From positions 211,971-275,970 of IMG/VR virus record IMGVR_UViG_3300047157_000197: a stretch of 64,000 nt of DNA; one strand, given 5' to 3'. The notes under the pieces are model-generated. The model saw only the letters and a program-made list of their open reading frames with translations, had not been told where the DNA came from and searched no databases. Shown piece after piece: positions 3-56,971 of this stretch (position 1 is the stretch's first letter; every line of letters begins with the position of its first letter). Position numbers and translations under genes: made by a program.

Positions 3-368
3 AATCCTGGTCATCCACATTTTTCATTTCAATATCAAGGTAGAGAGTTAGATTATTACGATAGAGAAATAGAATGTACATCACCACATCTTTTAGATTC
101 AGTTCATTGGTGTGATTCATTTGAAAAGTTTCCCCAACATATTGGAAAAGAAGGTGAGTACTTTACTACAACATCTCGTTATGGTAATTGGACAAACAAT
201 CCTTGTTTATATAAAAAAGATTTTTATTTAGAAACAGTAAAACAATTCGCAGGTGAGGGGATTGCATTAGAAGGTAACATCTCAAAGTGGTGGGCTAAAC
301 AAACTTACAAAGTTGCACATGGTGAGGGATTATTCAAACATATAGATGAGGGTAAACATGGCAGATAA
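3..368 (+). CDS. 5'-truncated glycosyltransferase-like (GT-A) protein, C-terminal part
   Basis: Open frame from the window edge (NPGHPHFSF...WTNNPCLY...GLFKHIDEGKHGR*) ending TAA 366-368; lies in a glycan operon; not in the ORF track. Confidence 0.55.
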   Translation, partial: NPGHPHFSFQYQGRELDYYDREIECTSPHLLDSVHWCDSFEKFPQHIGKEGEYFTTTSRYGNWTNNPCLYKKDFYLETVKQFAGEGIALEGNISKWWAKQTYKVAHGEGLFKHIDEGKHGR

Positions 369-1728
369 AATTAAATTAGTTATATTCGATTTAGATGGGG
401 TTCTTGTAGAAGCAAAGAACATTCATTATGATGCACTTAATGATGCATTGGGTAAGGAATATGCAATTAGTTGGAACGAACACTTATCTACTTACGATGG
501 ATTAAAAACCAATCAGAAGTTAGATATGTTAACCGAAAGAAAAGGATTACCTACATCATCTCATACAGATATTTGGATTCATAAACAAAAACTAACTTTA
601 GAAAAACTAAAACAATTAGAACCAAGTGATGTTCTTATTGAATTAATGGATAGTTTAGTTGAACGAGGATATAAAATAGCAGTATGTTCAAACTCAATTA
701 GAAAAACAGTTCTAACTGTACTTTCAAAGTTGGGTATTATGGAATTTATGGATTACATTATTTCAAACGAAGATGTTGAAAATAGTAAACCACATCCTGA
801 AATGTATTGGAATGCAATATCAAAGATGAAATGTTTACCAGAGGAAACTTTGATAGTAGAAGATTCACCTTATGGATTACTTGCAGCAGCTCGTTCTAAA
901 TCACACATACTTAGAGTTAAGAATACAAAACAAACTAATTTAAAAAACATAAATAACAAATTAAAACAAATAGAAATGGGAGAACAACAATCAACACCAG
1001 CATGGAGAGATGAAACTTTAAATGTTTTAATTCCAATGGCAGGAGCAGGAAGTAGATTCCAACAAGCAGGATATACTTTTCCAAAACCACTTATTGAAGT
1101 AAAAGGAAAACCTATGATTCAAGTAGTGGTAGAAAATCTAAATATCAAAGCAAACTTTATCTATGTAGTACAGAAAGAACATAGAGAAAAATATAACTTA
1201 GATACTTTGTTAAATTTAATCACACCAAATTGTAAAATTGTTGAAGTAGATGGTATTACAGAGGGTGCAGCTTGTACTGCATTACTTGCTAAAGAATATA
1301 TAGATTCGGAAAATCCTTTATTCTTCGCTAACTCAGACCAGTTCGTAGAATGGGATTCAAATGAGTTCTTATATAAAATGAACGAAACAAATGCAGATGG
1401 TGGGATTGTATCATTTAGAGCAACACACCCAAAGTGGAGTTTTGCTAAGATAGATGAACAAGGATTAGTAACTGAAGTTGCTGAAAAGAATCCTATATCA
1501 GATATTGCAACAGTTGGATATTACTATTGGAAGAATGGTTCTGATTTTGTAAAGTATGCAGAAGAAATGATTGAAAAGATGTTCAGAGTAAATGGAGAAT
1601 TCTATGTTTGTCCTGTTTTCAATCAAGCAATTGAAGATGGAAAAGAGATTCGTACATTTGATATTCCTAAGATGTGGGGATTGGGAACACCAGAAGATTT
1701 GAAAGAATATTTGGAAAATTATAAATAA
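358..1728 (+). CDS. HAD phosphatase fused to a sugar nucleotidyltransferase-like domain (BcbE/GT2_BcE-like)
   Basis: N-terminal HAD motifs FDLDGVL, KPHP, VEDS; C-terminal IPMAGAGSRF...PKPLI nucleotidyltransferase motif and LGTPEDL; likely start ATG 358. Confidence 0.85.
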   Translation: MADKIKLVIFDLDGVLVEAKNIHYDALNDALGKEYAISWNEHLSTYDGLKTNQKLDMLTERKGLPTSSHTDIWIHKQKLTLEKLKQLEPSDVLIELMDSLVERGYKIAVCSNSIRKTVLTVLSKLGIMEFMDYIISNEDVENSKPHPEMYWNAISKMKCLPEETLIVEDSPYGLLAAARSKSHILRVKNTKQTNLKNINNKLKQIEMGEQQSTPAWRDETLNVLIPMAGAGSRFQQAGYTFPKPLIEVKGKPMIQVVVENLNIKANFIYVVQKEHREKYNLDTLLNLITPNCKIVEVDGITEGAACTALLAKEYIDSENPLFFANSDQFVEWDSNEFLYKMNETNADGGIVSFRATHPKWSFAKIDEQGLVTEVAEKNPISDIATVGYYYWKNGSDFVKYAEEMIEKMFRVNGEFYVCPVFNQAIEDGKEIRTFDIPKMWGLGTPEDLKEYLENYK

Positions 1729-1743
1729 TTTCGTATATTTGTA
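1710..1743 (+). promoter_or_regulatory. Bacteroidota sigma70-type promoter
   Basis: TTTG-N20-TATATTTG directly upstream of 1751. Confidence 0.7.
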
Positions 1744-1750
1744 AGTAGAT

Positions 1751-2203
1751 ATGATATTAATAGCACATAGAGGAAATATAAATGGTAAGGTTGAGAAGTT
1801 TGAAAACACTCCAAGTTACATAGATTCTGCTATTGAACAAGGTTACGATGTTGAAGTAGATTTACGATATCATCAACATGAATTTTGGTTAGGACATGAT
1901 TATGCAAAATATGAAATTAATTTAAAATGGTTAACTGATAGAAAAGATTCTTTATGGATACATTGTAAAGATTTAATAACAATTGATATGTTAAGAGAAT
2001 TACAGATTCATAACAAAGTTGATTTACATTATTTTTTCCATAATGATGATGATTGTACGATAACTTCAAAAGGAGATTTGTGGGTTTATCCAGGAAAACA
2101 ACCAGTAAAAAATAGTATAGCAGTAATTCCAGAATGGCATCGAGATGATGTTAGTTTATGTAAAGGAATCTGTTCAGATAATATAATAAATTTTAAAGAA
2201 TGA
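1751..2203 (+). CDS. GDPD/PLC-like phosphodiesterase domain protein
   Basis: IAHRG, EN, VEVDL, LGHD, WIHCK motifs. Confidence 0.75.
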   Translation: MILIAHRGNINGKVEKFENTPSYIDSAIEQGYDVEVDLRYHQHEFWLGHDYAKYEINLKWLTDRKDSLWIHCKDLITIDMLRELQIHNKVDLHYFFHNDDDCTITSKGDLWVYPGKQPVKNSIAVIPEWHRDDVSLCKGICSDNIINFKE

Positions 2204-2634
2204 GTAAAATAGGATTTACAGCAGGTAACTTTGATTTACTACATCCTGGTTACATTTATACTTTTGAAGAAGCAAAGAAACATTGTGATAAGTTTTTTGT
2301 ATTTCTACACGCAGACCCATCTGAATATAGAAATAATAAATACAAACCAGTAGTTCCTTTATATGAAAGGTATAAAACTCTAATGGCTATTAAATACATT
2401 GATGCAGTTTATACTTACAAAACAGAGGAAGAATTATTAGATTTAATTATACATTGGAAACCTGATATAAGAATATTAGGTGAAGATTATATTGGGAAAT
2501 CATTTACAGGAGATGAATTACCTATTGAAGTTATTTACACTACTCGTTCACACGAATGGTCAACAACTAAAATTAAAAATCTAATTACAAAACAAACAAT
2601 TAAACAAAATCCTGATATACTAAAAGATGAATAA
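2200..2634 (+). CDS. TagD/RfaE-type cytidylyl/adenylyltransferase
   Basis: GNFDLLHPGY (HIGH-like), GEDY, STTKIK. Confidence 0.8.
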   Translation: MSKIGFTAGNFDLLHPGYIYTFEEAKKHCDKFFVFLHADPSEYRNNKYKPVVPLYERYKTLMAIKYIDAVYTYKTEEELLDLIIHWKPDIRILGEDYIGKSFTGDELPIEVIYTTRSHEWSTTKIKNLITKQTIKQNPDILKDE

Positions 2635-3829
2635 ACCAGAACAATCAATTCCATTATTTAAAGTTTACATGAACCCATCAGCAAAAGATGCGGCATGTGA
2701 AGTATTAGATAGTGGATATATAGGACAAGGACCAAAAGTAGATGAATTTGAAAAACAAATTGGAAATTACTTTGGTAATAAAAAAGTAGTAACTACAAAT
2801 GCAGGAACATCAGCATTACATTTAGCATTACATCTTTTGAAGAAACCTAAAGAAGATTGGAATGAAGATGTATTTCAAGGAATTGCATTTGTATCTCACA
2901 ACTGGCCAGGTATTCAAGATGGTGATGAAGTTTTAGCAACTGCTCTAACTTGTACTGCTTCAAATTGGCCAATCGTAGCGAATAACCTTAAAATCAAATG
3001 GGTAGATATAGACCCAAAAACTCTTAATATGGATTTGGAAGATTTAGAAAGAAAATTAACTCCAAAAACAAAAGTTATTATGGGAGTTCATTGGGGTGGG
3101 TATCCATTAGATTTGGAAAAAATAAGAGACATCAGAGTTAGATTTAGAAAAGAACATGGGTGGGCTCCTGCTTTGATAGAAGATGGTGCACATTCAATTG
3201 GTACAAAATACAAAGGAGAGTATTTAGGTAATCATGGAAACTTCGTAATGAACTCATTACAAGCAATTAAACACATCACATCAGTAGATGGTGGTATATT
3301 ATATTGTCCACATGAAGAATTATACGAAAGAGCTAAATTACTTAGATGGTATGGTATTGATAGAAGTCCAAAAGGAAGAACTGATTTCAGATGTGAGGCA
3401 GATATAGAAGAATGGGGATTCAAGTTCCACATGAATGATTTGTGTGCAGCAATTGGTATGGAAAACTTTAAATCAGTAGATACCATAATTTCTAAACACA
3501 AAGATAATGCACAATATTATGATGATAATCTAAAAGATGTAAATGGAGTTACCTTATTGGAAAGAGAAGAAGGATTTGAATCTGCATTTTGGATTTATAC
3601 AATGTTGGTAGATGATAGACCATCTTTCTATGAGTATATGAAAGAGTGTAACATTACAGTATCTCAAGTACACGAAAGAAATGATAAACATAGTTGTATG
3701 GCTGAATTTAAATCAGAACTACCTAACTTGGATAAAACAATTGGTAAGATAGTATCTATACCTGTTGGTTGGTGGGTTACCAATGAAGAAAGAGAATATA
3801 TTGTAGATTGTATTAAAAAATGGAAGTAA
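2627..3829 (+). CDS. DegT/DnrJ/EryC1/StrS sugar aminotransferase
   Basis: GTSALHLA, EDGAHS, SLQAIKHITSVDGG (PLP lysine). Confidence 0.9.
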   Translation: MNKPEQSIPLFKVYMNPSAKDAACEVLDSGYIGQGPKVDEFEKQIGNYFGNKKVVTTNAGTSALHLALHLLKKPKEDWNEDVFQGIAFVSHNWPGIQDGDEVLATALTCTASNWPIVANNLKIKWVDIDPKTLNMDLEDLERKLTPKTKVIMGVHWGGYPLDLEKIRDIRVRFRKEHGWAPALIEDGAHSIGTKYKGEYLGNHGNFVMNSLQAIKHITSVDGGILYCPHEELYERAKLLRWYGIDRSPKGRTDFRCEADIEEWGFKFHMNDLCAAIGMENFKSVDTIISKHKDNAQYYDDNLKDVNGVTLLEREEGFESAFWIYTMLVDDRPSFYEYMKECNITVSQVHERNDKHSCMAEFKSELPNLDKTIGKIVSIPVGWWVTNEEREYIVDCIKKWK

Positions 3830-4242
3830 CCTTATTATCATTATTGGAAAGTGATTTGCCATTTTTAATTGAAGTTAGAAATGATGAATCAACTCGTTCT
3901 CAATTAGGAAATGATTCTTTATTTACATTAGAAGATTCTACACAATGGTTTAAAAAAGAACAACCAGAGTGGTTACTTATTATAAACCATAATTTAACTA
4001 GAATCGGATACATGAGAATAGATGGTGATACAATTGGTATTGATATTCATCCTAATTTTCGTAGAAAAGGATATGCAAGATTGGCATATCAAAAATATTT
4101 AGAAGATACTGATTATGCAGACCTTTGGGTTTTTGAAGATAATCATGCTAAGAAACTATATGAAGAATTAGGATTTGTAGAAACAGGTGAATACGAAACG
4201 TTAAGAGATAGAAAGTATTTGAAAATGATATACGAAAAATGA
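3820..4242 (+). CDS. GNAT N-acetyltransferase (PseH-like)
   Basis: FRRKGYA acetyl-CoA loop, N..AKKLYEELGF; follows the aminotransferase. Confidence 0.8.
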   Translation: MEVTLLSLLESDLPFLIEVRNDESTRSQLGNDSLFTLEDSTQWFKKEQPEWLLIINHNLTRIGYMRIDGDTIGIDIHPNFRRKGYARLAYQKYLEDTDYADLWVFEDNHAKKLYEELGFVETGEYETLRDRKYLKMIYEK

Positions 4243-25236: not shown

Positions 25237-26007
25237 TTGGATAGATTTAAAAAAATACCACCTCTTGATATGAGTGAGTGGTTTGTTACAGAAAAAGAAA
25301 AGGACACCTTTCATCCTAATGATTGGAATATGCCAGTGCCTTGGATATCCTCATTTATTTTTACACATATAAAATCTGAATTTTGGGGTTATGGAAACGA
25401 CCAAGAATGGGATTATAAGCATAGACCAAAAGTTTTACAAATTGGTTGTGCTCAAGGATGGGATGCCATTGAAAATGCCAAAATACTTAAATTGCCTTCA
25501 ATAAATGGAGAGCTTCATATTATTGACTGGTTCAAAGGTAATTTAACTGTTGATACAGAAGAAGAATGGTATTATAATGAAAATAACCCACCAGAATGGA
25601 AATCCCACTTATGGAGTGAGGCAAAAAAATTCAAAGTAGATGATATTATAACAGTATTTGAAGGCGATTCAAGAAAAATGATTCATAATGTTATGGATAA
25701 TTGGTATGATATTATTTTTATTGACGGTGGTCATGAATATGATATCGTAAAATCAGATGTTGAAAATGGTTATAGAAAATTAAAAAAAGGTGGTATTATG
25801 GTTTTTGATGATTTTTCAGGAGATGAAACTACCTATGATGAATTAAATATCAAAGATGCATCTGAAGAAATGTTAGAAAAAGATACTTGGGAATTTGAAT
25901 CACATGGTTTGGTTCATGTTGGTGTTATAAAAGCAGTACATGAATTTTTAAAAGGAGATTATATTTCTGTTCCATGTCATCATAAATGCTATCACATTAA
26001 AAAATAA
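25237..26007 (+). CDS. class I SAM methyltransferase (Methyltransf_24-like)
   Basis: QIGCAQG, GDS, IFIDGGHEY, GGIMVFDD. Confidence 0.85.
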   Translation: MDRFKKIPPLDMSEWFVTEKEKDTFHPNDWNMPVPWISSFIFTHIKSEFWGYGNDQEWDYKHRPKVLQIGCAQGWDAIENAKILKLPSINGELHIIDWFKGNLTVDTEEEWYYNENNPPEWKSHLWSEAKKFKVDDIITVFEGDSRKMIHNVMDNWYDIIFIDGGHEYDIVKSDVENGYRKLKKGGIMVFDDFSGDETTYDELNIKDASEEMLEKDTWEFESHGLVHVGVIKAVHEFLKGDYISVPCHHKCYHIKK

Positions 26008-26016
26008 AATAAAGTT

Positions 26017-26490
26017 ATGATATATTGGTTCACAGGACAACCTGCAGCAGGAAAAACTATTTTAGGTAAAAAATTAATTGAGTTTCTTAAAACAGAAAAG
26101 AGAAATTGGAGAAGAACAGTCTTTCATTTAGATGGAGATGATTTAAGAGAACTAACTGTTAATAAAGATTATACCCCAAAGGGTAGAGAAATCAATATAA
26201 GAAATGCTCAGATGATTACAGAATTTCTTCATAAGAATGGGTGTGATGTAGTTGTTTCACTTGTAGCACCTCCAAGATGGTTACGAGAAGAATTCAAAGA
26301 AAGAATAGGTTTAGAAAACTTTCAAGAATTTTATGTACATTGTTCAGACCCTCGTGAAAGAGACCACTTTCATAGTAAGAATTACGAAGCACCTCAAGAT
26401 AACTTCATCGATGTTGATACAACAAAACATTCACCCGAAAAATCATTTTCAAAGATTATAAATACGCTGAAAAAGTTAAATAGATTATAA
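26017..26490 (+). CDS. cysC: adenylylsulfate (APS) kinase
   Basis: WFTGQPAAGKT, LDGDDLR, YEAP. Confidence 0.8.
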   Translation: MIYWFTGQPAAGKTILGKKLIEFLKTEKRNWRRTVFHLDGDDLRELTVNKDYTPKGREINIRNAQMITEFLHKNGCDVVVSLVAPPRWLREEFKERIGLENFQEFYVHCSDPRERDHFHSKNYEAPQDNFIDVDTTKHSPEKSFSKIINTLKKLNRL

Positions 26491-27533
26491 TGATTGATAA
26501 AAAAGAATATATCTGTTCAATGCCGTTTCAATATACAGAGGTATTTGATGACAGACAATATCTTTGTTGTCCCTCTTGGTTAGATGTGGATGTGTGGGAT
26601 GGAAAATCAATAAAATCTAGTTTTAATAGTGATAAGTCAAAAGAAGTTAGAGAATCTATTTTAGATGGTTCTTACAAATATTGCAATGAAACACAATGTC
26701 CATATTTATCAGGTCTAAAAAATAATAACTTATCAAAGAAATTTATAAAAAAAGATAAAAAAATTATAAACAACCTAAGAAGTAACGTTGAAATAAAAAC
26801 AGTTAATTTTTGTTTTGATAGAAGTTGTAATTTTCAATGTCCATCTTGTAGAAATGAATTAATAAACTACTATGGAAAAGATAGAGAACAAGTTGAAGTA
26901 AAACTTAAAGAAATTACAGATGAGATATCATCAACTGTAAAAATATTATATCTCACAGGAACTGCAGACCCATTTTACTCTAAATCATTTAGAGAGTTTT
27001 TAGAAAAATTAGATTCTACCAAATTTAAAAAATTAGAATCAATTCATTTACATACTAATGGAAGTTTATGGAATGAAAAAATGTGGAATAGATTAAGTGC
27101 AATACATCCTTATGTAAAAACTTGTGAAATATCAATAGATGCTGGAACAAAAAAAACCTATGAAACTAAAACAAGAATCGGTGGTAAGTGGGATGTGTTG
27201 TTAGAAAATTTAAAGTTTATCACCACAATAGATACTATACAATTCTTTAGTTTTTCATTTGTAGTACAAGACAGTAATTTTAGAGAAATGAAACTATTCT
27301 ATGATATAATAACTAATTGTATGAAAGGAAGTAAATCTAAATTTGATGTATTTTATAATTCAATAACAAATTGGGGTACTTATAGTGAAGAAGAATATAA
27401 TGAAAAAAATGTTACAAATTCAAATCATAAAGACCATAGCGAGTTTTTGGAAGTATTAAAAACAATGAAAGATTTACCTTTCTTTACAAATAATTTTAAT
27501 CACTTATATGAAAAAACAATAAGTTTAATATAA
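26490..27533 (+). CDS. radical SAM enzyme with N-terminal SPASM/twitch-like Cys cluster
   Basis: CNFQCPSC; N-terminal C..P, CC, C...CP. Confidence 0.85.
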   Translation: MIDKKEYICSMPFQYTEVFDDRQYLCCPSWLDVDVWDGKSIKSSFNSDKSKEVRESILDGSYKYCNETQCPYLSGLKNNNLSKKFIKKDKKIINNLRSNVEIKTVNFCFDRSCNFQCPSCRNELINYYGKDREQVEVKLKEITDEISSTVKILYLTGTADPFYSKSFREFLEKLDSTKFKKLESIHLHTNGSLWNEKMWNRLSAIHPYVKTCEISIDAGTKKTYETKTRIGGKWDVLLENLKFITTIDTIQFFSFSFVVQDSNFREMKLFYDIITNCMKGSKSKFDVFYNSITNWGTYSEEEYNEKNVTNSNHKDHSEFLEVLKTMKDLPFFTNNFNHLYEKTISLI

Positions 27534-27934
27534 TGGCAAATATAAAAACAAAAGCAGATAAAGAATCTTCCTCATCAGAAGTAAAGTATTCATTCTTTGC
27601 AGGTAGATGGCAACCACTTCACAAGGGGCATCTATGGTTAATTAATGAAAGATTAAAAGAAGGATATAAAGTATGGTTAGGTATCAGAGATGTAGAACCA
27701 GATGAAAAGAATCCTTGGACTGCAGAAGAAATTCTAAAAATGGTTCATGAAGGTGAGTTAAAAGAACTCATCTTAGAGGGTAAGGTAATTGCAACCATTA
27801 TACCTGATATCGAATCTATCAACTATGGTAGAGGAGTAGGATATGATATCATAGAGCACGTACCACCAAAAGAGATTGGGGATATTTCAGCAACATCTAT
27901 TCGTAATCAAATGAAAAAAGATGGTAAGCTATGA
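27533..27934 (+). CDS. HIGH-family nucleotidyltransferase
   Basis: GRWQPLHKGH, ISATSIR. Confidence 0.8.
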   Translation: MANIKTKADKESSSSEVKYSFFAGRWQPLHKGHLWLINERLKEGYKVWLGIRDVEPDEKNPWTAEEILKMVHEGELKELILEGKVIATIIPDIESINYGRGVGYDIIEHVPPKEIGDISATSIRNQMKKDGKL

Positions 27935-28419
27935 TTTTGTTTCAAGAAAAACTTATAGATGATATAGAAATAAAATACCTTCTTAATCTTTGGGATACTA
28001 ATTTAGTTCAAGATAATACTAAATTTTTAGATGAATATAAAGCACTAGCAATGGAATGGGTTGATGTAATTAAAAATAAGTTAGATATAAGTAGCTTGCA
28101 CAACGGAGGGTTTCATAATAAAAATTTTGAAAAAATAAGAATACAACATTATCACGAATCCATTGGTAATATAGAAACATACCATGGTCATGTCAATATT
28201 CATAATTATATTATATTTTTGAATGATGATTTTAAAGGTGGCGAATTAGAATTTGAAAATGGAATAATCATTAAACCATCAAAGGGAAGTTTAGTATATT
28301 TCAATAATAATGAAAGACATAGAGTTCTACCTTGTATCGGAAGTAGATATGTATTTACTGCATTAGGAAATACAGAAGCAAATATAGAATTTAAATCTAA
28401 AGAAAAAAGTATTATATAA
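27931..28419 (+). CDS. 2OG-Fe(II) oxygenase-like protein
   Basis: FLNDDFKGGEL, H..., GSRY; first ligand motif atypical (HxH/HxN). Confidence 0.65.
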   Translation: MILFQEKLIDDIEIKYLLNLWDTNLVQDNTKFLDEYKALAMEWVDVIKNKLDISSLHNGGFHNKNFEKIRIQHYHESIGNIETYHGHVNIHNYIIFLNDDFKGGELEFENGIIIKPSKGSLVYFNNNERHRVLPCIGSRYVFTALGNTEANIEFKSKEKSII

Positions 28420-28420
28420 T

Positions 28421-28615
28421 ATGGCATCAATAAAAGAAACTTTTATCAAAACTATTATTTGGAGAGTAATTGCTACTTCAATAACATTTTTAGTTAGTTG
28501 GGTTATAAGCGGTAACTTAGAGTTTGGATTAATGATAGGTGGTATAGATACAATAATAAAAACAATCGGGTATTTTACATATGAAAGATTATGGAATACT
28601 AAAAAAACAAAATAA
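28421..28615 (+). CDS. DUF2061-like small membrane protein
   Basis: KTIIWR...YERLW. Confidence 0.75.
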   Translation: MASIKETFIKTIIWRVIATSITFLVSWVISGNLEFGLMIGGIDTIIKTIGYFTYERLWNTKKTK

Positions 28616-28616
28616 A

Positions 28617-29645
28617 ATGATAAAACCAAATGTAAAAAATGAATGGGGTGATTTAAAAGAAATCATTGTAGGAAGTGCAATAAATGCACAAGTACCAACT
28701 GTTGGGGATAAATGTTTACATAATATTGATTATGCACACCTATCTGATGAAGAATTTAAAAACAGACCAAGTGGATTATATCCTCAAAAACTGATAGATG
28801 AAACTGAAGAAGATTTAGATGGAATTTCAGACCAACTTAGAGAACTTGGAGTAAAGGTTCACAGACCATTAGAAAGAGATTTTTCACAACCTATAAAAAC
28901 AGATAATTGGGAAGTTGATGGTTATTATAACTATTGCCCAAGAGATTCTATGTTAGTTATCAACGATAAAGTTATTGCAACACCAATGACTCTTAGACAT
29001 AGAAGTAATGAAGCAGAAACTTGTAAACCATTATTTGACCCAACACATTGGGTAGATGCTCCAAAACCAAAATTATTAGATTCAATCTATCAAAGAGAAG
29101 ATTTATCTATTCCAACGTTACTTGATGGTGAACCTGTTTTTGATGCAGCAAATGTTATTAAACATAATAATGATTTACTATATTTAGTTTCTAATACAGG
29201 TAATAAGACTGGTGCAGAGTGGTTAGAAAGATATTGTAAAGAAAACTTTGGTGAAGAATATAATGTACATTTAGCACAAGGTGTTTATGCATACATTCAT
29301 ATTGATACAACTTTTGTATTTGTAGGAGAAGGTAAGGTACTTTTAAATCCAACAAGAGTTAATGAATTCAATATACCAGAATTTTTAAAACCTTTTGATA
29401 AGATATGGGCACCCGAACCATTTCCTACTCAAGTACTTGATAATTGGTGTCCTGCTTCACCATGGTTGGGAATGAATATTTTACCAATCAATGATAAGTT
29501 AATAATGGTTGAAGAACACCAAACTCTACTAATGAAAGAATTAAAAAGATTTGGAATAGATACAATACCTGTAAGAATGAGACATGCTAGAACTTTTAGT
29601 GGTGGACCTCATTGTGTAACCTTAGATGTAGTTAGAGGTGAGTAA
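28617..29645 (+). CDS. amidinotransferase (glycine/inosamine-phosphate amidinotransferase family)
   Basis: NEW..LKEIIVG, CPRD, FDAA, HID, GGPHC; start 28617. Confidence 0.88.
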   Translation: MIKPNVKNEWGDLKEIIVGSAINAQVPTVGDKCLHNIDYAHLSDEEFKNRPSGLYPQKLIDETEEDLDGISDQLRELGVKVHRPLERDFSQPIKTDNWEVDGYYNYCPRDSMLVINDKVIATPMTLRHRSNEAETCKPLFDPTHWVDAPKPKLLDSIYQREDLSIPTLLDGEPVFDAANVIKHNNDLLYLVSNTGNKTGAEWLERYCKENFGEEYNVHLAQGVYAYIHIDTTFVFVGEGKVLLNPTRVNEFNIPEFLKPFDKIWAPEPFPTQVLDNWCPASPWLGMNILPINDKLIMVEEHQTLLMKELKRFGIDTIPVRMRHARTFSGGPHCVTLDVVRGE

Positions 29646-30723
29646 GCGTATATTAGATTTTCATCACCAAGCTAATAGATTATTTGGAAGATTTCTTGAT
29701 ATCAACGATTATAGAGATTCAGCCAATGGTGTTTATGATGCTATAATTGCACATAGACAAATTGAAGAAGATGGTGAAATTGAAGAACTTATTAAATATT
29801 GTAAAAAAACTACAAGAGTAATAGTAGATATAACAACCGAATCTGGTCAAATAGAACTTTTTATTGATAGATTTAATAAAATTATAAATAAACATCCATA
29901 TAAATTCATTTTAATTTCAGATGTACCTATTAATAAAGTAGTAAATTGTAAAGTGATAGATGATTATTCACTTGCATTTACATCTCATTTAAATGATTCA
30001 ATGGTTGGTAGAGTATATCATCATCCAACAGGTGCAAAATTGCAACATGGACTTGATAGTTATAATGGTTCTTTAAGAATACAAAGATTATGGTTAAATT
30101 ACTTTTTTATTACAAAATTCAGAAGAGATGTATTACCATTGAACGTTGAGTTTAATCATTATGTAAATTTAGGCGAAGGTCCACAATTTTATCAAGAACA
30201 ATTTGAAAATTTACTTAAAGAATTACCCACAACTGAAAGAAATGAAATACTTCATAATAAACAATATATAAACCCACCTGGAAAAGATATTGATATTGCA
30301 CATTTCAATGATTTAAAACACCATTGTAACACCGTAAACGTTGTAAGTGAAAACACAATAGGTAATGATATGAATAAAAACGATGATTCCTTTCATATAA
30401 CTTTCACAGAAAAAACAATTAAACCATTTGTAAGAGGACAGATACCGTTAATACATAGTTATGTAGGATTGCAATCTAAATTAAGAGAATTAGGATTTGA
30501 TTTATACGATGAATTTGTAAACCATTCATATGAAAATGAATCAGATTCAGTAAAAAGACTTGAAATGATTGTAGATGAGGGTAAACGATTAATGTACTTA
30601 GATACTGAAAATTATTTAAGAGAAAATCAAAGTAGAGTTTACAAGAATAAAAAATTATGTGAGTATTTGGTATGGCAAGGTAAAACCATGGTACATGATA
30701 TAATAGATAATATTAATATTTAA
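29638..30723 (+). CDS. GT10-like (fucosyltransferase-like) protein
   Basis: NVVSE, FTEKTIKPF, LRELGF, HSYE. Confidence 0.5.
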   Translation: MSKRILDFHHQANRLFGRFLDINDYRDSANGVYDAIIAHRQIEEDGEIEELIKYCKKTTRVIVDITTESGQIELFIDRFNKIINKHPYKFILISDVPINKVVNCKVIDDYSLAFTSHLNDSMVGRVYHHPTGAKLQHGLDSYNGSLRIQRLWLNYFFITKFRRDVLPLNVEFNHYVNLGEGPQFYQEQFENLLKELPTTERNEILHNKQYINPPGKDIDIAHFNDLKHHCNTVNVVSENTIGNDMNKNDDSFHITFTEKTIKPFVRGQIPLIHSYVGLQSKLRELGFDLYDEFVNHSYENESDSVKRLEMIVDEGKRLMYLDTENYLRENQSRVYKNKKLCEYLVWQGKTMVHDIIDNINI

Positions 30724-30783: not shown

Positions 30784-31347
30784 ATGGAAAATAAAAAAGA
30801 AAAAATATTCCCTAATTATGACCCAACTCAAGATTTATCTTTAGCTGGTAAAAATCGAAGAATGAAACGAGGATTAGGTGCAAAACCACTTCTCGAATCA
30901 GAGATAAAGGAAGTTCAAAAGAAAGCTCGTTCAGCAATGGAAGCAGCTAGATTATTGGGAGTATCTTACAACACTTATAAAAAATACGCAAGAAAATATG
31001 GTATCTTTGAAGATTTAAAGAACCCTGATGGAACTGGTATTCGTAAAGGATATAATATCAAACGAGGAAAATACTCTTTAGATGATATTTTAAAAGGGAA
31101 ATATCCTGATTACCCTGTTTGGAAACTTAAACAAAGATTACTCAATAATGGTTATATGTTAGAAAAATGTAACAAATGTGGATTTGAAGAAAGAAGAATC
31201 ACAGACCATAAAGTTCCACTTGTTTTAGATTTTCTTGATGGAGATAGAAAGAATCATAATTATGAAAATTTAAGAATGTTATGTTTTAATTGTTCCTTTC
31301 TAATTAATGGAAATTTATCAGGCCCTAAAAAAGAATACGAATATTAG
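30784..31347 (+). CDS. HTH + degenerate HNH-like zinc-finger protein
   Basis: AARLLGVSYNT; CNKC...LDFLDGD..N...NLRMLCFNC with the usual His residues missing. Confidence 0.65.
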   Translation: MENKKEKIFPNYDPTQDLSLAGKNRRMKRGLGAKPLLESEIKEVQKKARSAMEAARLLGVSYNTYKKYARKYGIFEDLKNPDGTGIRKGYNIKRGKYSLDDILKGKYPDYPVWKLKQRLLNNGYMLEKCNKCGFEERRITDHKVPLVLDFLDGDRKNHNYENLRMLCFNCSFLINGNLSGPKKEYEY

Positions 31348-41581: not shown

Positions 41582-42085
41582 ATGAGAATTCTAATTATAT
41601 CACTTCCAAGGACAGGGTCTAATTCTTTAATGAAGAAATATTCTTCTAAATATAAATTAGATATGTACGGAGAACCATTTAATGAACGTCATCTACTACC
41701 AAGTGATTGGATAACATCTGATAATGTTATAGTTACAACCAAGTTGACACAATGTCCAGAAAATGTTAAAAATAGTGTTAAATATTGGTATGAACAATCA
41801 AAATCATTTGACAAAGTTATTTTATTATCAAGAAAAGATTTGTATGATTGTGCAAAGAGTTTTTCTTTTTTACTTGATAAACGTAATGAGGGATATAAAT
41901 ACAATGCTTCTTATGTTTGGGAAGAAACTCCAAGTTTAAATAATATTTATAAAAACTTACAATCAGAACATAAAAAATTAGAATTAATTTCAGAAAAATT
42001 AAATATTTCTGTAATATATTATGAAGATATTTTTGATATTAATTCAAAAGATAGGTTAAGAAAAAATAATAAAGAGATATTATAA
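41582..42085 (+). CDS. sulfotransferase-like protein
   Basis: SLPRTGS (5'-PSB loop), EPF, LSR, YED. Confidence 0.65.
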   Translation: MRILIISLPRTGSNSLMKKYSSKYKLDMYGEPFNERHLLPSDWITSDNVIVTTKLTQCPENVKNSVKYWYEQSKSFDKVILLSRKDLYDCAKSFSFLLDKRNEGYKYNASYVWEETPSLNNIYKNLQSEHKKLELISEKLNISVIYYEDIFDINSKDRLRKNNKEIL

Positions 42086-42633: not shown

Positions 42634-44262
<1,629 letters not shown>

Positions 44263-45187: not shown

Positions 45188-45188
45188 T

Positions 45189-50677: not shown

Positions 50678-51417
50678 AAATATTAGTTATAGGAGATAGT
50701 TGTACAGATGTTTTTGTATATGGTAGTTGTGATAGGTTATGTCCTGAAGCACCAATACCTGTATTCAAACCATCAAAAACCATAACCAACCAAGGTATGG
50801 CTGGAAACGTTGTTGATAACCTCAGAGCATTAGGAGTTAGAAAAACTGAACTAATCACTAACAACGAACAAATCATAAAAACAAGATATGTAGAAACTAA
50901 ATCAAACCAAATGCTACTTAGAGTAGATGGTAATGATAAAGTTTCTAATTCATTTGATTATCGTAAGGTAGATTTTGATTCATATGATGCAGTAATTGTA
51001 TCTGATTATGATAAAGGATATCTAACGTATAAAGATATTGGTGAAATTGGTAAAAAATCTAAACTATCTTTTATTGATACTAAAAAAACAATAGGTAGTG
51101 GAGATTACTTCAAAGATTATACATTTGTAAAAATGAATGAAGAAGAATGGGATAATTGTGTTTCAAAAGGTGCAATTTATTCAGATTGGAAGAATAATTT
51201 AATTGTAACTATGTCTGAAAGAGGATGTATGTATGATGAGAAAAGATATCCGGTTGATAATACAATTGAAGTAAGAGATTTGAGTGGTGCAGGTGATACT
51301 TGGATGGCATCATTTGTAATGAAATATGTAGAAACTTCAAATATTGATACATCAATAATATTTGCAAATGATAATGCAACAATAGTAGTACAAAAAAGAG
51401 GTGTAACAACAATATGA
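50674..51417 (+). CDS. PfkB sugar kinase, HldE/RfaE kinase-domain-like
   Basis: RLCPEAPIPV, GMAGNV, SDYDKG, DLSGAGDT. Confidence 0.85.
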   Translation: MKILVIGDSCTDVFVYGSCDRLCPEAPIPVFKPSKTITNQGMAGNVVDNLRALGVRKTELITNNEQIIKTRYVETKSNQMLLRVDGNDKVSNSFDYRKVDFDSYDAVIVSDYDKGYLTYKDIGEIGKKSKLSFIDTKKTIGSGDYFKDYTFVKMNEEEWDNCVSKGAIYSDWKNNLIVTMSERGCMYDEKRYPVDNTIEVRDLSGAGDTWMASFVMKYVETSNIDTSIIFANDNATIVVQKRGVTTI

Positions 51418-52217
51418 TAAAAGAAATAATTTGTATAGGAACTTCTTTTACAGAAGGGTCTGGATTAAATCCAAAAGGTAAAAAAGATGTAAACCAAGCT
51501 GTAAAATGGTATAAAGAAAATAAAAATATTACAATAAAATCACTGTCAGAATACTCCTGGCCAAATGTTCTATCTGAACTATTAGATATAAAAGTAAGAA
51601 ATTTAGGTAAATGTGGTTCAAGTATAGAATATCTTATGAGAACTCTTGAAGAAATACTTGAAACCGAAGATTACTCAAATAAATTATTTATCTTAGAATA
51701 CTCTAGTTGGGGTAGAAGTGAATTATGGTCATCAGAATATAATCAATGGATAGTTGCAAATTGGGGACATAAAAATGGAGATGAACCATCAGATGGATAT
51801 GCTACTATGCTTTCTACTGATTATAATTTCGGAGAACAATTACCTCATTCAGAAATAAATTTTTATGATGAATTTTTAAATAAATTTTTTAATGAAAAAG
51901 AATTTTTAAAACAAAGAGATAGACATTTCTTAAACTTATTATATAAACTTAAATCTAAAAATATTAAATATCAAGTACTTCTATTAGAGAATTGTTTCTT
52001 AAATGAACTAGAATCTAATCCATTGTTTAACAATAAAGATTTAGATTTTAAAATAGATAATAAGCATTGTGATTTATGGGGATTTGTAGAAAAGAAGGGT
52101 TGGACACTAACTGCAGAAACAAACGGAAAAATAAAGGATGACCACCCATCAATTTCAGGACATCGATTTCTAGCTGAAGAACTTGCAAGAAAATTAAAAG
52201 TAGTTAATAACATATAA
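51414..52217 (+). CDS. SGNH-hydrolase-like protein
   Basis: GTSFTEG, SWP, NLGKCG, DDHPS. Confidence 0.65.
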   Translation: MIKEIICIGTSFTEGSGLNPKGKKDVNQAVKWYKENKNITIKSLSEYSWPNVLSELLDIKVRNLGKCGSSIEYLMRTLEEILETEDYSNKLFILEYSSWGRSELWSSEYNQWIVANWGHKNGDEPSDGYATMLSTDYNFGEQLPHSEINFYDEFLNKFFNEKEFLKQRDRHFLNLLYKLKSKNIKYQVLLLENCFLNELESNPLFNNKDLDFKIDNKHCDLWGFVEKKGWTLTAETNGKIKDDHPSISGHRFLAEELARKLKVVNNI

Positions 52218-55278: not shown

Positions 55279-56195
55279 AATATATCATAAATACAGGTTG
55301 TAGTTATGGAGTAATGTTTCGTTCCATGAAAGAGTTTACAAAAGGAAACGATACTGATTTTAAAGTAATTGATTTGCATTGTGATTCATTTGGTGCAGAA
55401 TATCAAAAAAGAAGTGTAGTTTATACTGTTTCTAAATTATTATGGGATGGTGTATTACCTGATAATATATTTGTAATAATAGAATGGTCTCAACCAAATA
55501 GATTATTTACAGAAATACCAAATGAATTATGTAAAGATATTTTAAATGATTCGGATAATATTGAAGGTACTTTTATTTTAGATAATAAATTTAATTTAAA
55601 AGAAAAAACTAATCAATTAATTGGAAAATGGAAATCATTAAATGTTATTATTGGTAATAAAGTTTACACAAACCCAGATGTTGATGATTTAACCTATTTT
55701 GAAAATAAAGAAATAGAATGGTATCTAAGTGAATATAAAAATAATTGTCACATATCACATAAACCAATAGATAGATATGAGCATTATTTACAATGTATTG
55801 TAGATACTCAAAGTTTTTTAACCTCATTAAATATAGAACACATTTCATTCTTAATGAATGATACATTTACAGATTTAAAAAGTAAATCAGATTATTTAAA
55901 AAATATTTGGAATTGTGTTGATTTAACTAAATTTGTATTTCATAATAGGTTTGGTGGAATTGATGAGTTTGCAATGGAAAAATTTGGTAACATTTCTTAT
56001 CTAAGTGGAGCAAATGAATGGGATATACCACCAGATGGTAATATGATGGAATTTGGTAATCATCCACATGATTCTGTATATATAGATTTCTTTGAACAAT
56101 ATATTTATATTAAAGGTAAAAAGTATTTTGGAAACCTAACATTTGATTATACGGATAGGTGGTTAAAAACAAAACATAATGCAATTAGGTTATGA
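55275..56195 (+). CDS. SGNH-hydrolase-like protein
   Basis: GCSYG, WSQPNR, GNHP. Confidence 0.55.
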   Translation: MKYIINTGCSYGVMFRSMKEFTKGNDTDFKVIDLHCDSFGAEYQKRSVVYTVSKLLWDGVLPDNIFVIIEWSQPNRLFTEIPNELCKDILNDSDNIEGTFILDNKFNLKEKTNQLIGKWKSLNVIIGNKVYTNPDVDDLTYFENKEIEWYLSEYKNNCHISHKPIDRYEHYLQCIVDTQSFLTSLNIEHISFLMNDTFTDLKSKSDYLKNIWNCVDLTKFVFHNRFGGIDEFAMEKFGNISYLSGANEWDIPPDGNMMEFGNHPHDSVYIDFFEQYIYIKGKKYFGNLTFDYTDRWLKTKHNAIRL

Positions 56196-56971
56196 TAAAT
56201 AAAAAATCAGAGTGGAATCAAACAAAATCCGATTGGGGATTTGGAAGAATAAAACTTGATAATTTTCTTGACGAAAAAACTGTACACCAATTATATGAAG
56301 AATGTAAGAATGCACCAAAAGGTGGATGGACTGTATTTACTCGTGCTGGTTCTCGTATGGAAGAATTTAATGATTTAATTTCATTACCAACTGCACATAG
56401 AGTAACCTATGATATAATGCATAGTGGAGAGTTCTTATATGAATTAGAACAATTGACAGGTATTGTAGGATTATTACCAGACCCTCATTTAGTTGGAGCA
56501 GGATATTCAATAATCCGAAATGGAAAAGATTTAGGTTGTCATTATGATTTCAATTGGAATGATAGAATTCGATTACATAGAAAACTAACATCACTACTAT
56601 ATATTACACCAGATTGGAAAAATGAGTGGGGAGGACATATTCAGTATTATGATGATAATATTGATATAAATCCAAAATCAAATCTTATAGAATCAGTTTC
56701 ACCAAAGTTTAACCGATTGGTAATTAATGAAAATGTAAAACATGCACCATACCATAGAGTAAGTTCGGTAAACGCACCAAATGATATTCCAAGATGTGCA
56801 ATCAGATTTTTCTATTATATTTCTACATCAGAATATGATAAGGATAACCCACCACATAGAAGTACATACAAAACAAACGAATACGAACATCACAAATTAC
56901 ATGAAGAAGAAAATTGGGATGGACACTTTGTAGGAAAAGGTGGTGAAGATTATGGATATAACTCAAAATAA
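56192..56971 (+). CDS. 2OG-Fe(II) oxygenase
   Basis: HYDFN, WGG, YH, R..I. Confidence 0.85.
   Translation: MINKKSEWNQTKSDWGFGRIKLDNFLDEKTVHQLYEECKNAPKGGWTVFTRAGSRMEEFNDLISLPTAHRVTYDIMHSGEFLYELEQLTGIVGLLPDPHLVGAGYSIIRNGKDLGCHYDFNWNDRIRLHRKLTSLLYITPDWKNEWGGHIQYYDDNIDINPKSNLIESVSPKFNRLVINENVKHAPYHRVSSVNAPNDIPRCAIRFFYYISTSEYDKDNPPHRSTYKTNEYEHHKLHEEENWDGHFVGKGGEDYGYNSK

What the first reader, a model, noticed from the sequence alone, without database searches (positions are those of the whole stretch)
25237..30723. Amidinotransferase in a natural-product-like tailoring cluster
Seen: methyltransferase, radical SAM, 2OG oxygenase, an amidinotransferase with an intact Asp/His/Cys set and a GT10-like gene; two DegT aminotransferases lie elsewhere in the window. 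Known: streptidine is made by DegT-family aminotransferases followed by StrB1 amidinotransferase. Inference: synthesis of a guanidino sugar or cyclitol, possibly sulfated or methylated, to decorate virion, DNA or host surface.
Basis: partly seen in the sequence, partly recalled or inferred. Interest (0 to 1): 0.65.

Follow-up and report, generated by a model that had tools for sequence, protein, structure and literature searches.

The report
Phage amidinotransferase in glycan-tailoring island
A large marine T4-like phage carries a streptomycin-type (StrB1-like) amidinotransferase packed together with sugar-activating, tailoring and glycosyltransferase genes, which suggests that the phage makes a sugar carrying a guanidino group; this chemistry has not been described for phage glycans and has not been tested.

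Summary
Window 25237-30723 is one co-oriented, tightly packed block, but it has eight genes, not five. In order they are a SAM methyltransferase, an APS-kinase-type P-loop kinase, a radical SAM enzyme, an HxGH nucleotidyltransferase, a small 2OG-type oxygenase, a missed 64-aa DUF2061 gene, the amidinotransferase and a GT-B glycosyltransferase.

The amidinotransferase matches StrB1 (PDB 1bwd) over its full length (E 4e-84). It keeps the Asp/His/Cys triad and scores far above AGAT, SxtG and HsvA. Its relatives form a mostly viral clade (60 IMG/VR loci).

Across six different gene contexts these relatives sit beside GT-B transferases, nucleotide-sugar enzymes, short DegT-like PLP proteins, 2OG oxygenases, radical SAM enzymes and sulfotransferase-like genes. 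A cultured cyanophage and Campylobacter phages show parallel modules.

The host genome is a 276-kb gp23-type myovirus from seawater. It has no cyclitol-forming genes, so an amino sugar is the more likely substrate than a cyclitol.

"GT10-like" is only weakly indicated; the GT-B fold is solid.

The product, the order of steps and the acceptor (virion, DNA or host surface) are all inferred. I rate this a new variant of phage glycan tailoring, of moderate to high interest.

The parts
25237..26007 (+). SAM-dependent methyltransferase (Methyltransf_24 class). An accessory member of the island, always found 5' of the kinase when present.
   Evidence: Pfam PF13578 at 5e-15. Homologues (cluster c49) occur in 6 loci, 85% identical in L009.
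26017..26490 (+). APS-kinase-type P-loop kinase (cluster c6). Part of the invariant core of the window-type island.
   Evidence: PF01583 at 4.6e-14, above the Pfam cut-off. NCBIfam APS-kinase models reach 1e-17 but fall below their cut-offs. PDB APS kinases score 8e-11. The P-loop and LDGD motifs are visible in the sequence and the lid is shortened. Present in all 11 distinct type-A contexts.
26490..27533 (+). Radical SAM enzyme of the twitch/SPASM-related type (cluster c62). An accessory member.
   Evidence: PF04055 at 1.5e-8 and N_Twi_rSAM at 1.4e-14 over the full length. CxxxCxxC motif present. Homologues lie beside the amidinotransferase in another context type (L020, L021, L026).
27533..27934 (+). 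Small HxGH / ISxTxxR nucleotidyltransferase (NMNAT- or cytidylyltransferase-like, cluster c7). Part of the invariant core.
   Evidence: PF01467 at 6.8e-6, NCBIfam NMNAT at 5e-10, PDB NMNATs at 3.5e-6. phrog_10255 is a kinase plus nucleotidyltransferase fusion that matches both this gene and 26017-26490.
27931..28419 (+). Small 2OG-Fe(II)-oxygenase-like protein (cluster c85) with an HxH...H...R motif in place of HxD.
   Evidence: PF13640 at 1.5e-8 and phrog_61 at 6e-15. Aligned with c21 homologues. A small 2OG gene sits directly upstream of the amidinotransferase in S-SCSM2R as well.
28421..28615 (+). Part of the invariant core.
   Evidence: Translation. PF09834 at 2.2e-20. Found beside the amidinotransferase in all type-A loci and beside genuine APS kinases in 2 of 9 sampled gammaproteobacterial loci.
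28617..29645 (+). StrB1-type amidinotransferase. The longest ORF starts at 28581; the likely true start is Met13 at 28617.
   Evidence: PDB phmmer: StrB1 4e-84, HsvA 4e-43, SxtG 2e-42, AGAT 4e-40. Triad D188/H240/C345 is invariant. 1496 homologues found, with 60 IMG/VR loci. Contigs at 99% identity occur in three metatranscriptome libraries.
29638..30723 (+). GT-B fold glycosyltransferase of an unnamed, phage-expanded family (cluster c1). Its start overlaps the amidinotransferase stop by 8 nt.
   Evidence: No Pfam or PDB sequence hit. AF2 model with pLDDT 77 and pTM 0.81. Foldseek finds SdgB, BshA, GtfA and T4 BGT. VIA gives Z 13.9 for 6eji, 13.0 for PimA, 12.3 for T4 BGT and 10.9 for an alpha1,3-FucT. 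c1 is present in 34 of 62 loci and has 5 paralogues in this genome.
30784..31347 (+). HNH endonuclease that marks the conserved right border of the variable island.
   Evidence: Weak PF01844 hit. Cluster c10 lies directly downstream of the island in 15 loci, 94% identical in L009.
346..4242 (+). Upstream sugar-nucleotide group: a HAD plus NTP-transferase fusion, a cytidylyltransferase, a full-length DegT aminotransferase and a GNAT.
   Evidence: Pfam hits (DegT at 2.9e-70).
41582..42085 (+). Sulfotransferase-like protein (c40 paralogue).
   Evidence: Related to c40, which has weak Sulfotransfer_1 and Sulfotransfer_3 hits. PRTGS and RKD..S PAPS-binding-like motifs are visible in the sequence. 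This copy itself has no Pfam hit.
51414..52217 (+). c39 homologue, SGNH/GDSL-like by motif only. In relatives it lies inside the island next to the amidinotransferase.
   Evidence: 61% identical to L002 c39. GTSFTEG and DDHP motifs present. No Pfam hit.
56192..58533 (+). A c4 2OG oxygenase (56192-56971), a 308-aa gene of unknown function, and a c8 short DegT-like PLP protein (57895-58533). In other phages these partners abut the amidinotransferase.
   Evidence: Pfam hits. 86% and 69% identity to c4 and c8. The PLP-lysine motif SFHLKK..GQGG is retained. L012 carries a c8-c1 fusion.

Best explanation
The block is a variable glycan-tailoring island of a ~276-kb marine gp23-type myovirus.

Its anchor is a StrB1-type L-arginine:amine amidinotransferase. 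I propose that this enzyme converts the amino group of a phosphorylated or nucleotide-activated amino sugar into a guanidino group.

The proposed route has five steps:
1. An amino sugar is made by the phage's DegT-type PLP enzymes and SDR/RmlC-type enzymes, which are encoded elsewhere in the genome.
2. The P-loop kinase phosphorylates it.
3. The amidinotransferase amidinates it through a Cys345 amidino-enzyme intermediate, releasing ornithine.
4. The HxGH nucleotidyltransferase activates it.
5. The translationally coupled GT-B transferase places it on a macromolecular acceptor.

The methyltransferase, radical SAM enzyme, 2OG-type oxygenase and the sulfotransferase-like and SGNH-like paralogues would add further decorations. 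Alternatively, the APS-kinase-type kinase and DUF2061 may supply PAPS for sulfation rather than phosphorylate the sugar.

Shown here: the homology, the catalytic residues, the GT-B fold, the conserved gene partnerships and the presence of the sequence in RNA libraries. Inferred: the substrate class, the order of steps, the product and the acceptor. I favour a cytoplasmic acceptor such as virion proteins over lipid-linked host glycans.
For: - The amidinotransferase matches StrB1 over its full length with an intact triad. Streptomyces StrB1-type homologues are 42-46% identical.
- The clade is overwhelmingly viral: 60 IMG/VR loci, against only 3 distant hits from the (clade-specific) pattern scan of 185,579 genomes.
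- Neighbourhood clustering of 62 loci shows c1 GT-B in 34 of them. Other recurrent neighbours are an RmlC-like cupin, SDR epimerase/dehydratases, a UDP-Glc-dehydrogenase-like gene, the short DegT-like c8, 2OG oxygenases, SPASM and B12 radical SAM enzymes, PhyH, a TPP enzyme and a sulfotransferase-like c40.
- L012 carries a c8-c1 fusion.
- In type-B phages the amidinotransferase sits inside a cluster that in this genome lies at C1:87276-98179.
- The invariant core of the window-type island is kinase, nucleotidyltransferase, DUF2061 and amidinotransferase, present in all 11 distinct contexts.
- Parallel modules exist in the cultured cyanophage S-SCSM2R (short DegT, rSAM, GT, 2OG, AT, GT2) and in Campylobacter phage CP220 (rSAMs, AT, two GT-A genes, PAP2; PMC2853527).
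- No cyclitol-forming genes were found in the genome.
- No Wzx/Wzy-like polytopic membrane proteins lie within 8 kb of any viral amidinotransferase.
- Genes in the block overlap or are at most 24 nt apart.
- Contigs at 99% identity covering the amidinotransferase and GT occur in three seawater metatranscriptome libraries.
Against: - No chemistry has been observed, and no guanidino sugar nucleotide is known to me.
- The kinase is APS-kinase-type, so it may phosphorylate a nucleotide 3'-OH rather than a sugar.
- The c1 GT is absent from 5 of the 11 window-type islands and from the type-C loci, within the flanks I hold.
- The loci are phylogenetically related, so the co-occurrence counts are not independent.
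- The 2OG protein lacks the canonical metal-binding carboxylate.
- RNA-library contigs can derive from contaminating DNA.
- The substrate-binding residues of StrB1 are not defined well enough to predict the acceptor.
Confidence: 0.5

Rival explanations
1. DNA hypermodification. The phage makes hydroxymethyl-pyrimidine DNA, and the GT-B paralogues glycosylate it, as T4 AGT and BGT do, with a tailored and possibly guanidinylated sugar that blocks host nucleases.
For: - The phage is gp23-type.
- It has a second, divergent thymidylate-synthase-family protein at G000:C1:186572-187270. Its best PDB hit is the CMP 5-hydroxymethylase MilA (4e-6), and an Asp appears where thymidylate synthase has Asn.
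- The c1 model matches T4 BGT and AGT at Z 12.2-12.3, within about 1.7 of the best hit.
- No lipid-linked export genes lie nearby.
Against: - The TS-like gene is not within 8 kb of any amidinotransferase. It was not found in two amidinotransferase-bearing records of another lineage, although these are only 66-72% complete.
- Five GT paralogues plus SPASM and B12 radical SAM enzymes, a TPP enzyme and sulfotransferase-like genes look more like complex glycan synthesis.
- The GT-B match is generic.
- The weak sequence-level leads point to GT10, not to the BGT or AGT families.
Confidence: 0.15
2. Diffusible small molecule. The island makes a soluble guanidino glycoside or an aminoglycoside-like metabolite (the "antibiotic synthesis genes" reading proposed for S-SCSM2R), or a guanidino compatible solute.
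For: - The closest characterised relative is the streptomycin enzyme StrB1.
- The tailoring set (methyltransferase, radical SAM, 2OG, DegT) resembles natural-product clusters.
- The authors of PMC12801897 proposed this reading.
- No glycan export machinery lies nearby.
Against: - No cyclitol-forming genes were found.
- No exporter or self-resistance gene was seen.
- Multiple paralogous GTs and large sugar-nucleotide clusters fit glycoconjugates better.
- A lytic phage gains little from a slowly made secreted antibiotic; this last point is inference.
Confidence: 0.12
3. Protein side-chain chemistry. The prolyl/lysyl-hydroxylase-like 2OG oxygenases and the GTs hydroxylate and glycosylate phage or surface proteins, and the amidinotransferase acts on a protein amine (lysine to homoarginine) or on a sugar already attached to the protein.
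For: - Small P4H-type 2OG genes directly precede the amidinotransferase in three lineages.
- The top Foldseek hits of the GT are the protein O-glycosyltransferases SdgB and GtfA.
- The window encodes a secreted protein with a Ser/Gly/Asp repeat tract of more than 200 residues (12578-14353).
- A second amidinotransferase and a 2OG oxygenase of S-SCSM2R were detected in virion preparations (PMC12801897).
Against: - No member of the StrB1/AGAT family is known to act on proteins (my own knowledge).
- The Ser/Asp-repeat protein was not found in the flanks of other loci.
- The complex prediction could not be run.
Confidence: 0.08
4. Stand-alone auxiliary metabolic gene. The enzyme redirects host arginine (to guanidinoacetate, homoarginine or ornithine supply) independently of its neighbours.
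For: IMG automatic names include glycine amidinotransferase. Many phages carry isolated metabolic genes.
Against: - It scores far better against StrB1 than against AGAT.
- It is translationally coupled to a GT.
- It keeps conserved partners across six context types.
Confidence: 0.05

Closest known systems
StrB1, L-arginine:inosamine-phosphate amidinotransferase of streptomycin biosynthesis (PDB 1bwd)
   Same: - Collinear over the full length (E 4e-84), with only two short indels.
- Asp/His/Cys triad conserved.
- Works in a setting with DegT-family PLP enzymes and a kinase, as streptidine synthesis does.
   Different: - About 42-46% identical to Streptomyces homologues.
- Encoded by a phage.
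- No inositol or cyclitol genes in the genome.
- The partner kinase is APS-kinase-type.
- Tightly coupled to a glycosyltransferase.
- Substrate unknown.
AGAT / CyrA / SxtG / HsvA amidinotransferases
   Same: Same pentein fold family and the same catalytic triad (E 1e-40 to 1e-43).
   Different: They score about half as many bits as StrB1. HsvA and SxtG carry insertions before the EPxFDAA segment that the phage enzyme and StrB1 lack.
Amidinotransferase plus radical SAM modules of Campylobacter phages CP220/CPt10, and the "antibiotic synthesis genes" of cyanophage S-SCSM2R
   Same: T4-like phages whose variable module combines radical SAM enzymes, a small upstream gene (2OG in S-SCSM2R), an amidinotransferase and glycosyltransferases. 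CP220 and this window also each carry a PAP2 phosphatase.
   Different: - Only 28% (CP220) and 39% (S-SCSM2R) identity.
- Their GTs are GT-A/GT2 types.
- They lack the kinase, nucleotidyltransferase and DUF2061 core.
- No function has been shown in either.
Virus-encoded glycan pathways (cyanophage LPS-type gene clusters, chlorovirus and mimivirus glycosylation, mycobacteriophage virion glycosylation) - from my own knowledge
   Same: The virus carries its own nucleotide-sugar tailoring enzymes and soluble glycosyltransferases.
   Different: None of these is known to include an amidinotransferase or a guanidino sugar.
PAPS synthesis (ATP sulfurylase plus APS kinase) and the Campylobacter MeOPN pathway (the APS-kinase homologue Cj1415 plus a cytidylyltransferase) - from my own knowledge
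   Same: They pair an APS-kinase-family kinase with a nucleotidyltransferase. Methyltransferases and sulfotransferase-like genes occur in the same genomes.
   Different: - The nucleotidyltransferase here is NMNAT-like, not a sulfurylase.
- No glutamine kinase or amidohydrolase is present.
- The kinase lid is shortened.

Membership tests
Amidinotransferase family (StrB1/AGAT, pentein superfamily) | Full-length sequence homology to characterised members | tested here: met
   phmmer against PDB: StrB1 4e-84 (query residues 17-352), HsvA 4e-43, SxtG 2e-42, AGAT 4e-40.
Amidinotransferase family (StrB1/AGAT, pentein superfamily) | Catalytic Asp-His-Cys triad | tested here: met
   D188, H240 and C345 align with StrB1 positions 179, 227 and 332. 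They are invariant in 22 homologues of 59-87% identity.
Amidinotransferase family (StrB1/AGAT, pentein superfamily) | Arginine-dependent amidino transfer to an amine acceptor | not testable with these tools
   This needs an enzyme assay.
Streptidine-type aminocyclitol pathway | A source of cyclitol (inositol-1-phosphate synthase, inositol dehydrogenase or a sugar-phosphate cyclase) | tested here: not met
   PF07994, PF01408 and PF01761 are absent from the complete 276-kb genome, and the control genomes were detected. Supply of cyclitol by the host is not excluded.
Streptidine-type aminocyclitol pathway | A DegT/StsC-type aminotransferase working with the amidinotransferase | tested here: met
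   DegT genes lie at window 2627-3829 and 57895-58533. The short DegT-like c8 is adjacent to the amidinotransferase in types D and E, L047, L056, L060 and S-SCSM2R.
Glycosyltransferase family GT10 (alpha1,3/4-fucosyltransferases) | Match to PF00852 or a significant sequence match to a GT10 member | tested here: not met
   No Pfam hit. The profile of 22 homologues against PDB has FUT11 as its best hit, but only at E 0.13. Atlas feature hits to GT10 clusters score 0.78-0.79, which is lead level only.
Glycosyltransferase family GT10 (alpha1,3/4-fucosyltransferases) | GT-B fold with a conserved C-terminal E-K nucleotide-sugar motif | tested here: inconclusive
   The GT-B fold is clear (Z 13.9, full length), but fucosyltransferases score lower (Z 10.2-10.9) than GT4-type enzymes. 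R150, E258 and K259 are invariant. Their equivalence to fucosyltransferase residues rests on my memory only.
Adenylyl-sulfate (APS) kinase | Family model match and P-loop / LDGD motifs | tested here: inconclusive
   PF01583 scores 53 bits against a cut-off of 21, but the NCBIfam equivalog scores 61 against a cut-off of 139. The motifs are present and the lid is shortened. Context supports sulfate activation: DUF2061 sits beside genuine APS kinases and a sulfotransferase-like gene lies between the kinase and the nucleotidyltransferase in L006.
Radical SAM superfamily | CxxxCxxC cluster motif and family model match | tested here: met
   PF04055 scores 35.5 bits against a cut-off of 29.5. The motif is visible in the translation.
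2OG-Fe(II) oxygenase | HxD/E...H iron-binding triad plus the 2OG-binding Arg | tested here: not met
   The family model is matched (35.9 bits against 27). However, the aligned motif reads HxH in the window protein and in L006, while c21 relatives have HxD. The distal His and the Arg are present.
T-even hydroxymethylcytosine glycosylation system | A dCMP hydroxymethylase together with DNA glucosyltransferases | tested here: inconclusive
   A TS-family protein resembling MilA is present. The GT-B model matches BGT and AGT at Z 12 but no better than many other GT-B enzymes. There is no linkage to the island.

The most novel reading that the evidence does not exclude
T4-like phages of several host phyla share a module that builds a guanidino sugar: arginine-derived amidination of an activated amino sugar by a virus-specific StrB1-type clade. 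They attach this sugar to virion proteins or to hydroxymethylated DNA. That would be a cationic glycoconjugate chemistry so far known only from aminoglycoside antibiotics, with the bacterial StrB1 lineage nested among viral lineages.
Probability: 0.3. Interest if true: 0.8.

Novelty: new variant of a known kind. Interest (0 to 1): 0.58.

Why it matters
Phage-encoded glycan pathways are known. An amidinotransferase tied to glycosyltransferases predicts a positively charged guanidino sugar on a phage or host macromolecule, which would be new chemistry for virus-host recognition, for evasion of nucleases or receptors, and for glycobiology.

The enzyme clade is abundant in seawater. It has 1496 homologues, and this stretch occurs near-identically in at least 14 DNA metagenome runs.

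The module recurs in Campylobacter phages and cyanophages, where it has stayed unexplained since 2010. A single enzyme assay could therefore assign function to a widespread module.

The tree also raises the question of whether the antibiotic enzyme StrB1 and the phage enzymes share a recent origin.

Tried and rejected
- Megablast of the block against 50,697 phage records found no match.
- The search for related loci with the single protein found only the near-identical contig; an alignment was needed.
- I asked whether window 58526-59581 (351 aa), which occupies the position of a second amidinotransferase in type-D loci, is also an amidinotransferase. It is not: BLASTP E 0.08 and no PDB hit.
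- Sigma-70 promoter, terminator and T4 late-promoter (TATAAATA) scans gave counts at chance level.
- tblastn of the kinase against phages returned only a few distant, uninformative hits.
- Literature searches for DUF2061 and for Firehammervirus plus radical SAM gave nothing functional.
- I looked for the TS-like gene near amidinotransferases and found none.
- I looked for Ser/Asp-repeat proteins in the other loci and found none in the held flanks.
- The careful tree search did not finish in time. The root is therefore unknown.
- The second large protein search, on the TS-like protein, only showed that it is conserved in this phage lineage.

Full report
**What is in the sequence**

The window is the last 64 kb of a single 275,970-bp IMG/VR virus record that CheckV rates as complete. 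It is about 30% G+C and nearly all genes are on the + strand. The record encodes a gp23-type major capsid protein. The nearest cultured capsid relatives, at 53-57% identity, are Flavobacterium and Microcystis myoviruses and an uncultured huge phage. There is no psbA gene.

Between 25237 and 30723 the ORFs overlap or lie at most 24 nt apart. In order they are:
- 25237-26007: Methyltransf_24 methyltransferase.
- 26017-26490: APS-kinase-type P-loop kinase.
- 26490-27533: radical SAM protein with CxxxCxxC and a full-length twitch-type match.
- 27533-27934: 133-aa nucleotidyltransferase with HxGH and ISxTxxR motifs.
- 27931-28419: small 2OG-FeII_Oxy_3 protein.
- 28581-29645: the amidinotransferase.
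- 29638-30723: a 361-aa protein without Pfam hits.

The apparent 162-nt gap before the amidinotransferase is not empty. It holds a 64-aa DUF2061 gene at 28421-28615 (PF09834, 2.2e-20). The amidinotransferase therefore most likely starts at Met13 (28617), where its 342-346-aa homologues start.

**The amidinotransferase**

Pfam sees only a marginal ADI match. A direct search of PDB sequences gives StrB1 (1bwd) at 4e-84 and 286 bits over residues 17-352, with just two short indels. HsvA, SxtG and AGAT follow at 1e-40 to 1e-43.

D188, H240 and C345 align with StrB1 positions 179, 227 and 332. They are invariant across 22 homologues of 59-87% identity. StrB1-type homologues in 401 sampled Streptomyces genomes reach 42-46% identity.

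The family is large, with 1496 hits. As far as these searches can tell, it is mainly viral. The alignment-derived patterns found 60 loci in IMG/VR but only three distant relatives (41% identity or less) among 185,579 prokaryote genomes. That pattern scan is biased towards the viral clade.

I built a quick maximum-likelihood tree of 53 distinct sequences. Viral context types A, B and C form one well-supported clade. The Streptomyces StrB1-type sequences fall among viral lineages. The tree has no AGAT-type outgroup and contains long branches, so the root is unknown.

**Gene partners**

I called ORFs in 67 loci, clustered the proteins and annotated cluster representatives. Six context types emerged.

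In the window's own type there are 11 distinct arrangements. Kinase (c6), nucleotidyltransferase (c7), DUF2061 (c9) and amidinotransferase are always present. They lie between a conserved EF-hand-like gene and a conserved HNH endonuclease. The methyltransferase, radical SAM enzyme, small 2OG oxygenase, an SGNH-like protein (c39, assigned by motif only), a sulfotransferase-like protein (c40) and the downstream 361-aa protein (c1) come and go.

Across all types, c1 is the most frequent partner, present in 34 of 62 loci and often in two or three copies. Other neighbours are:
- an RmlC-like cupin, directly upstream of the amidinotransferase in all type-C loci;
- SDR epimerase/dehydratases and a UDP-glucose-dehydrogenase-like protein;
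- SPASM and B12 radical SAM enzymes;
- PhyH and P4H-type oxygenases and a TPP enzyme;
- a conserved short (~212 aa) DegT-like protein (c8) that keeps the PLP-lysine motif.

One locus (L012) fuses c8 to c1.

The window's genome carries the same genes dispersed over several sites:
- a cluster at C1:87276-98179 that corresponds to the genes flanking the amidinotransferase in type-B phages;
- c4 and c8 at window 56192-58533;
- c39 at window 51414-52217;
- sulfotransferase-like paralogues at window 41582-42085 and at two other sites.

These loci are related to one another, so the counts are not independent. However, the pattern spans amidinotransferase identities from 49% to 99%.

The pattern is also repeated in cultured phages. 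S-SCSM2R has a short DegT, rSAM, GT, 2OG, amidinotransferase and GT2 in a row, among three more GTs. Its authors called these antibiotic synthesis genes (PMC12801897). Campylobacter phage CP220 has four radical SAM genes, a small ORF, the amidinotransferase, another radical SAM gene, two GT-A genes and a PAP2 phosphatase (PMC2853527).

**The downstream protein**

An AlphaFold2 model built from 22 homologues (pLDDT 77, pTM 0.81) is a full-length GT-B glycosyltransferase. Foldseek finds SdgB, BshA, GtfA, T4 BGT and OtsA. The exhaustive aligner gives Z 13.9 for 6eji, 13.0 for PimA, 12.8 for PglA, 12.3 and 12.2 for T4 BGT and AGT, and 10.2-10.9 for alpha1,3-fucosyltransferases.

There are hints of GT10 affinity: the best profile hit is FUT11 at E 0.13, Atlas feature hits score 0.78-0.79, and there is an invariant E-K pair. 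None of these is significant. The fold is established; the GT family is not.

**Sugar or cyclitol, and sulfation**

The complete genome lacks inositol-1-phosphate synthase, Gfo/Idh/MocA dehydrogenases and DHQ-synthase-like cyclases. It has several SDR, RmlC-like and nucleotidyltransferase genes. An amino sugar is therefore the more likely substrate than a streptidine-like cyclitol.

The kinase passes the Pfam APS-kinase threshold but not the NCBIfam equivalog thresholds, and it has a shortened lid. Three observations favour a PAPS-supply role:
- DUF2061 lies next to genuine APS kinases in 2 of 9 sampled gammaproteobacterial loci.
- A sulfotransferase-like gene sits between the kinase and the nucleotidyltransferase in L006.
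- The genome has three sulfotransferase-like paralogues.

A sugar-phosphate activation route (kinase, then amidinotransferase, then nucleotidyltransferase, then GT) would fit StrB1's need for a phosphorylated substrate. It remains equally open.

**Acceptor**

No polytopic membrane protein of the Wzx/Wzy type lies within 8 kb of any viral amidinotransferase. This favours a cytoplasmic acceptor.

Two leads were noted but not resolved:
- A second, divergent thymidylate-synthase-family protein at C1:186572-187270 resembles the CMP hydroxymethylase MilA. It is conserved in this lineage but is never linked to the island. It keeps a DNA-glycosylation reading alive.
- A secreted protein at window 12578-14353 has a Ser/Gly/Asp repeat tract of more than 200 residues. 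It recalls the substrates of SdgB-type GT-B enzymes.

**Population and expression data**

The 5.5-kb stretch occurs near-identically in at least 14 seawater or viral DNA runs. Contigs from six metatranscriptome libraries hold 36-66% of its sampled words. Contigs at 99% identity or better cover the amidinotransferase and the GT in three RNA libraries. This is compatible with transcription but not proof, because DNA carry-over is possible.

In one viral metagenome the contigs cover 25237-27924 at depth 30-50 and then stop at the nucleotidyltransferase/2OG junction. The right half of the island is therefore replaced, or more than 5% divergent, in co-occurring strains. That fits the cassette-like variation seen among loci.

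**Verdict**

- Supported: a StrB1-type enzyme embedded in phage glycan tailoring, with methylation and probable sulfation capacity.
- Unlikely: the cyclitol arm.
- Unproven: the GT10 label.
- Inferred: the product and the target.

The presence of amidinotransferases in phages has been reported before. The recurring amidinotransferase-glycosyltransferase module and its predicted guanidino sugar have not been characterised.

Noticed in passing
window 28421-28615: A 64-aa DUF2061 membrane-protein gene fills the apparent gap before the amidinotransferase. An 88-aa antisense ORF (28363-28629) is its shadow. The longest amidinotransferase ORF (from 28581) would overlap it by 35 nt, so Met13 (28617) is the likelier start.
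   Followed up: yes
window 12578-14353: A 591-aa protein with an N-terminal signal peptide, a tract of more than 200 residues made only of Ser/Gly/Asp/Glu (long SD and DSD repeats), and a C-terminal domain ending in Phe, as outer-membrane barrels do. It explains the local G+C peak (0.39) and the overlapping ORFs on both strands. It is a possible O-glycosylation substrate.
   Followed up: partly
G000:C1:186572-187270 (locus L070 1204-1902): A second, divergent 232-aa thymidylate-synthase-family protein in addition to a canonical ThyA at C1:37174-38055. Its best PDB hit is the CMP 5-hydroxymethylase MilA (4e-6). It is 70-94% conserved in many marine contigs. It may make a hydroxymethyl-pyrimidine nucleotide.
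   Followed up: partly
G000:C1:87276-98179: A second glycan cluster outside the window: a SPASM radical SAM enzyme, three c1-type GT-B paralogues, three SDR epimerase/dehydratases, an RmlC-like cupin and a TPP enzyme. In other phages these genes flank the amidinotransferase directly.
   Followed up: partly
window 27924-27982, seen in run X12 and loose ends of X15: In a viral metagenome, contigs match 25237-27924 at depth 30-50 and then vanish. An RNA-library contig diverges exactly at 27932, the nucleotidyltransferase/2OG gene junction. This indicates strain-level cassette replacement inside the island.
   Followed up: partly
window 27931-28419: The small 2OG-oxygenase-like protein and its closest homologue have HxH where relatives have the iron-binding HxD. 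The distal His and Arg are kept. It is either an unusual three-His site or inactive.
   Followed up: partly
window 39461-40132 and 40254-40811: The N-terminal and C-terminal halves of an N6/N4 DNA methylase lie in two separate ORFs 121 nt apart. This could be a split gene, a frameshift or an intervening element. A complete DNA methylase lies at 47041-48402.
   Followed up: no
window 30784-31347: An HNH endonuclease with an HTH domain is conserved (up to 94% identity) immediately downstream of the variable island in 15 loci. It may mark, or even promote, cassette exchange.
   Followed up: no
window 42646-44262; 44690-46188; 46188-46913: A GroEL-type chaperonin, a phosphoribosyltransferase with a PNP/UDP phosphorylase fragment, and an FNR-like FAD/NAD oxidoreductase. 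These are auxiliary genes unrelated to the finding.
   Followed up: no
locus L012 9713-11530: A 605-aa protein fuses the short DegT-like PLP domain (c8) to the c1 GT-B domain. It lies directly after an amidinotransferase and a 2OG oxygenase, giving a Rosetta-stone link between these partners.
   Followed up: partly
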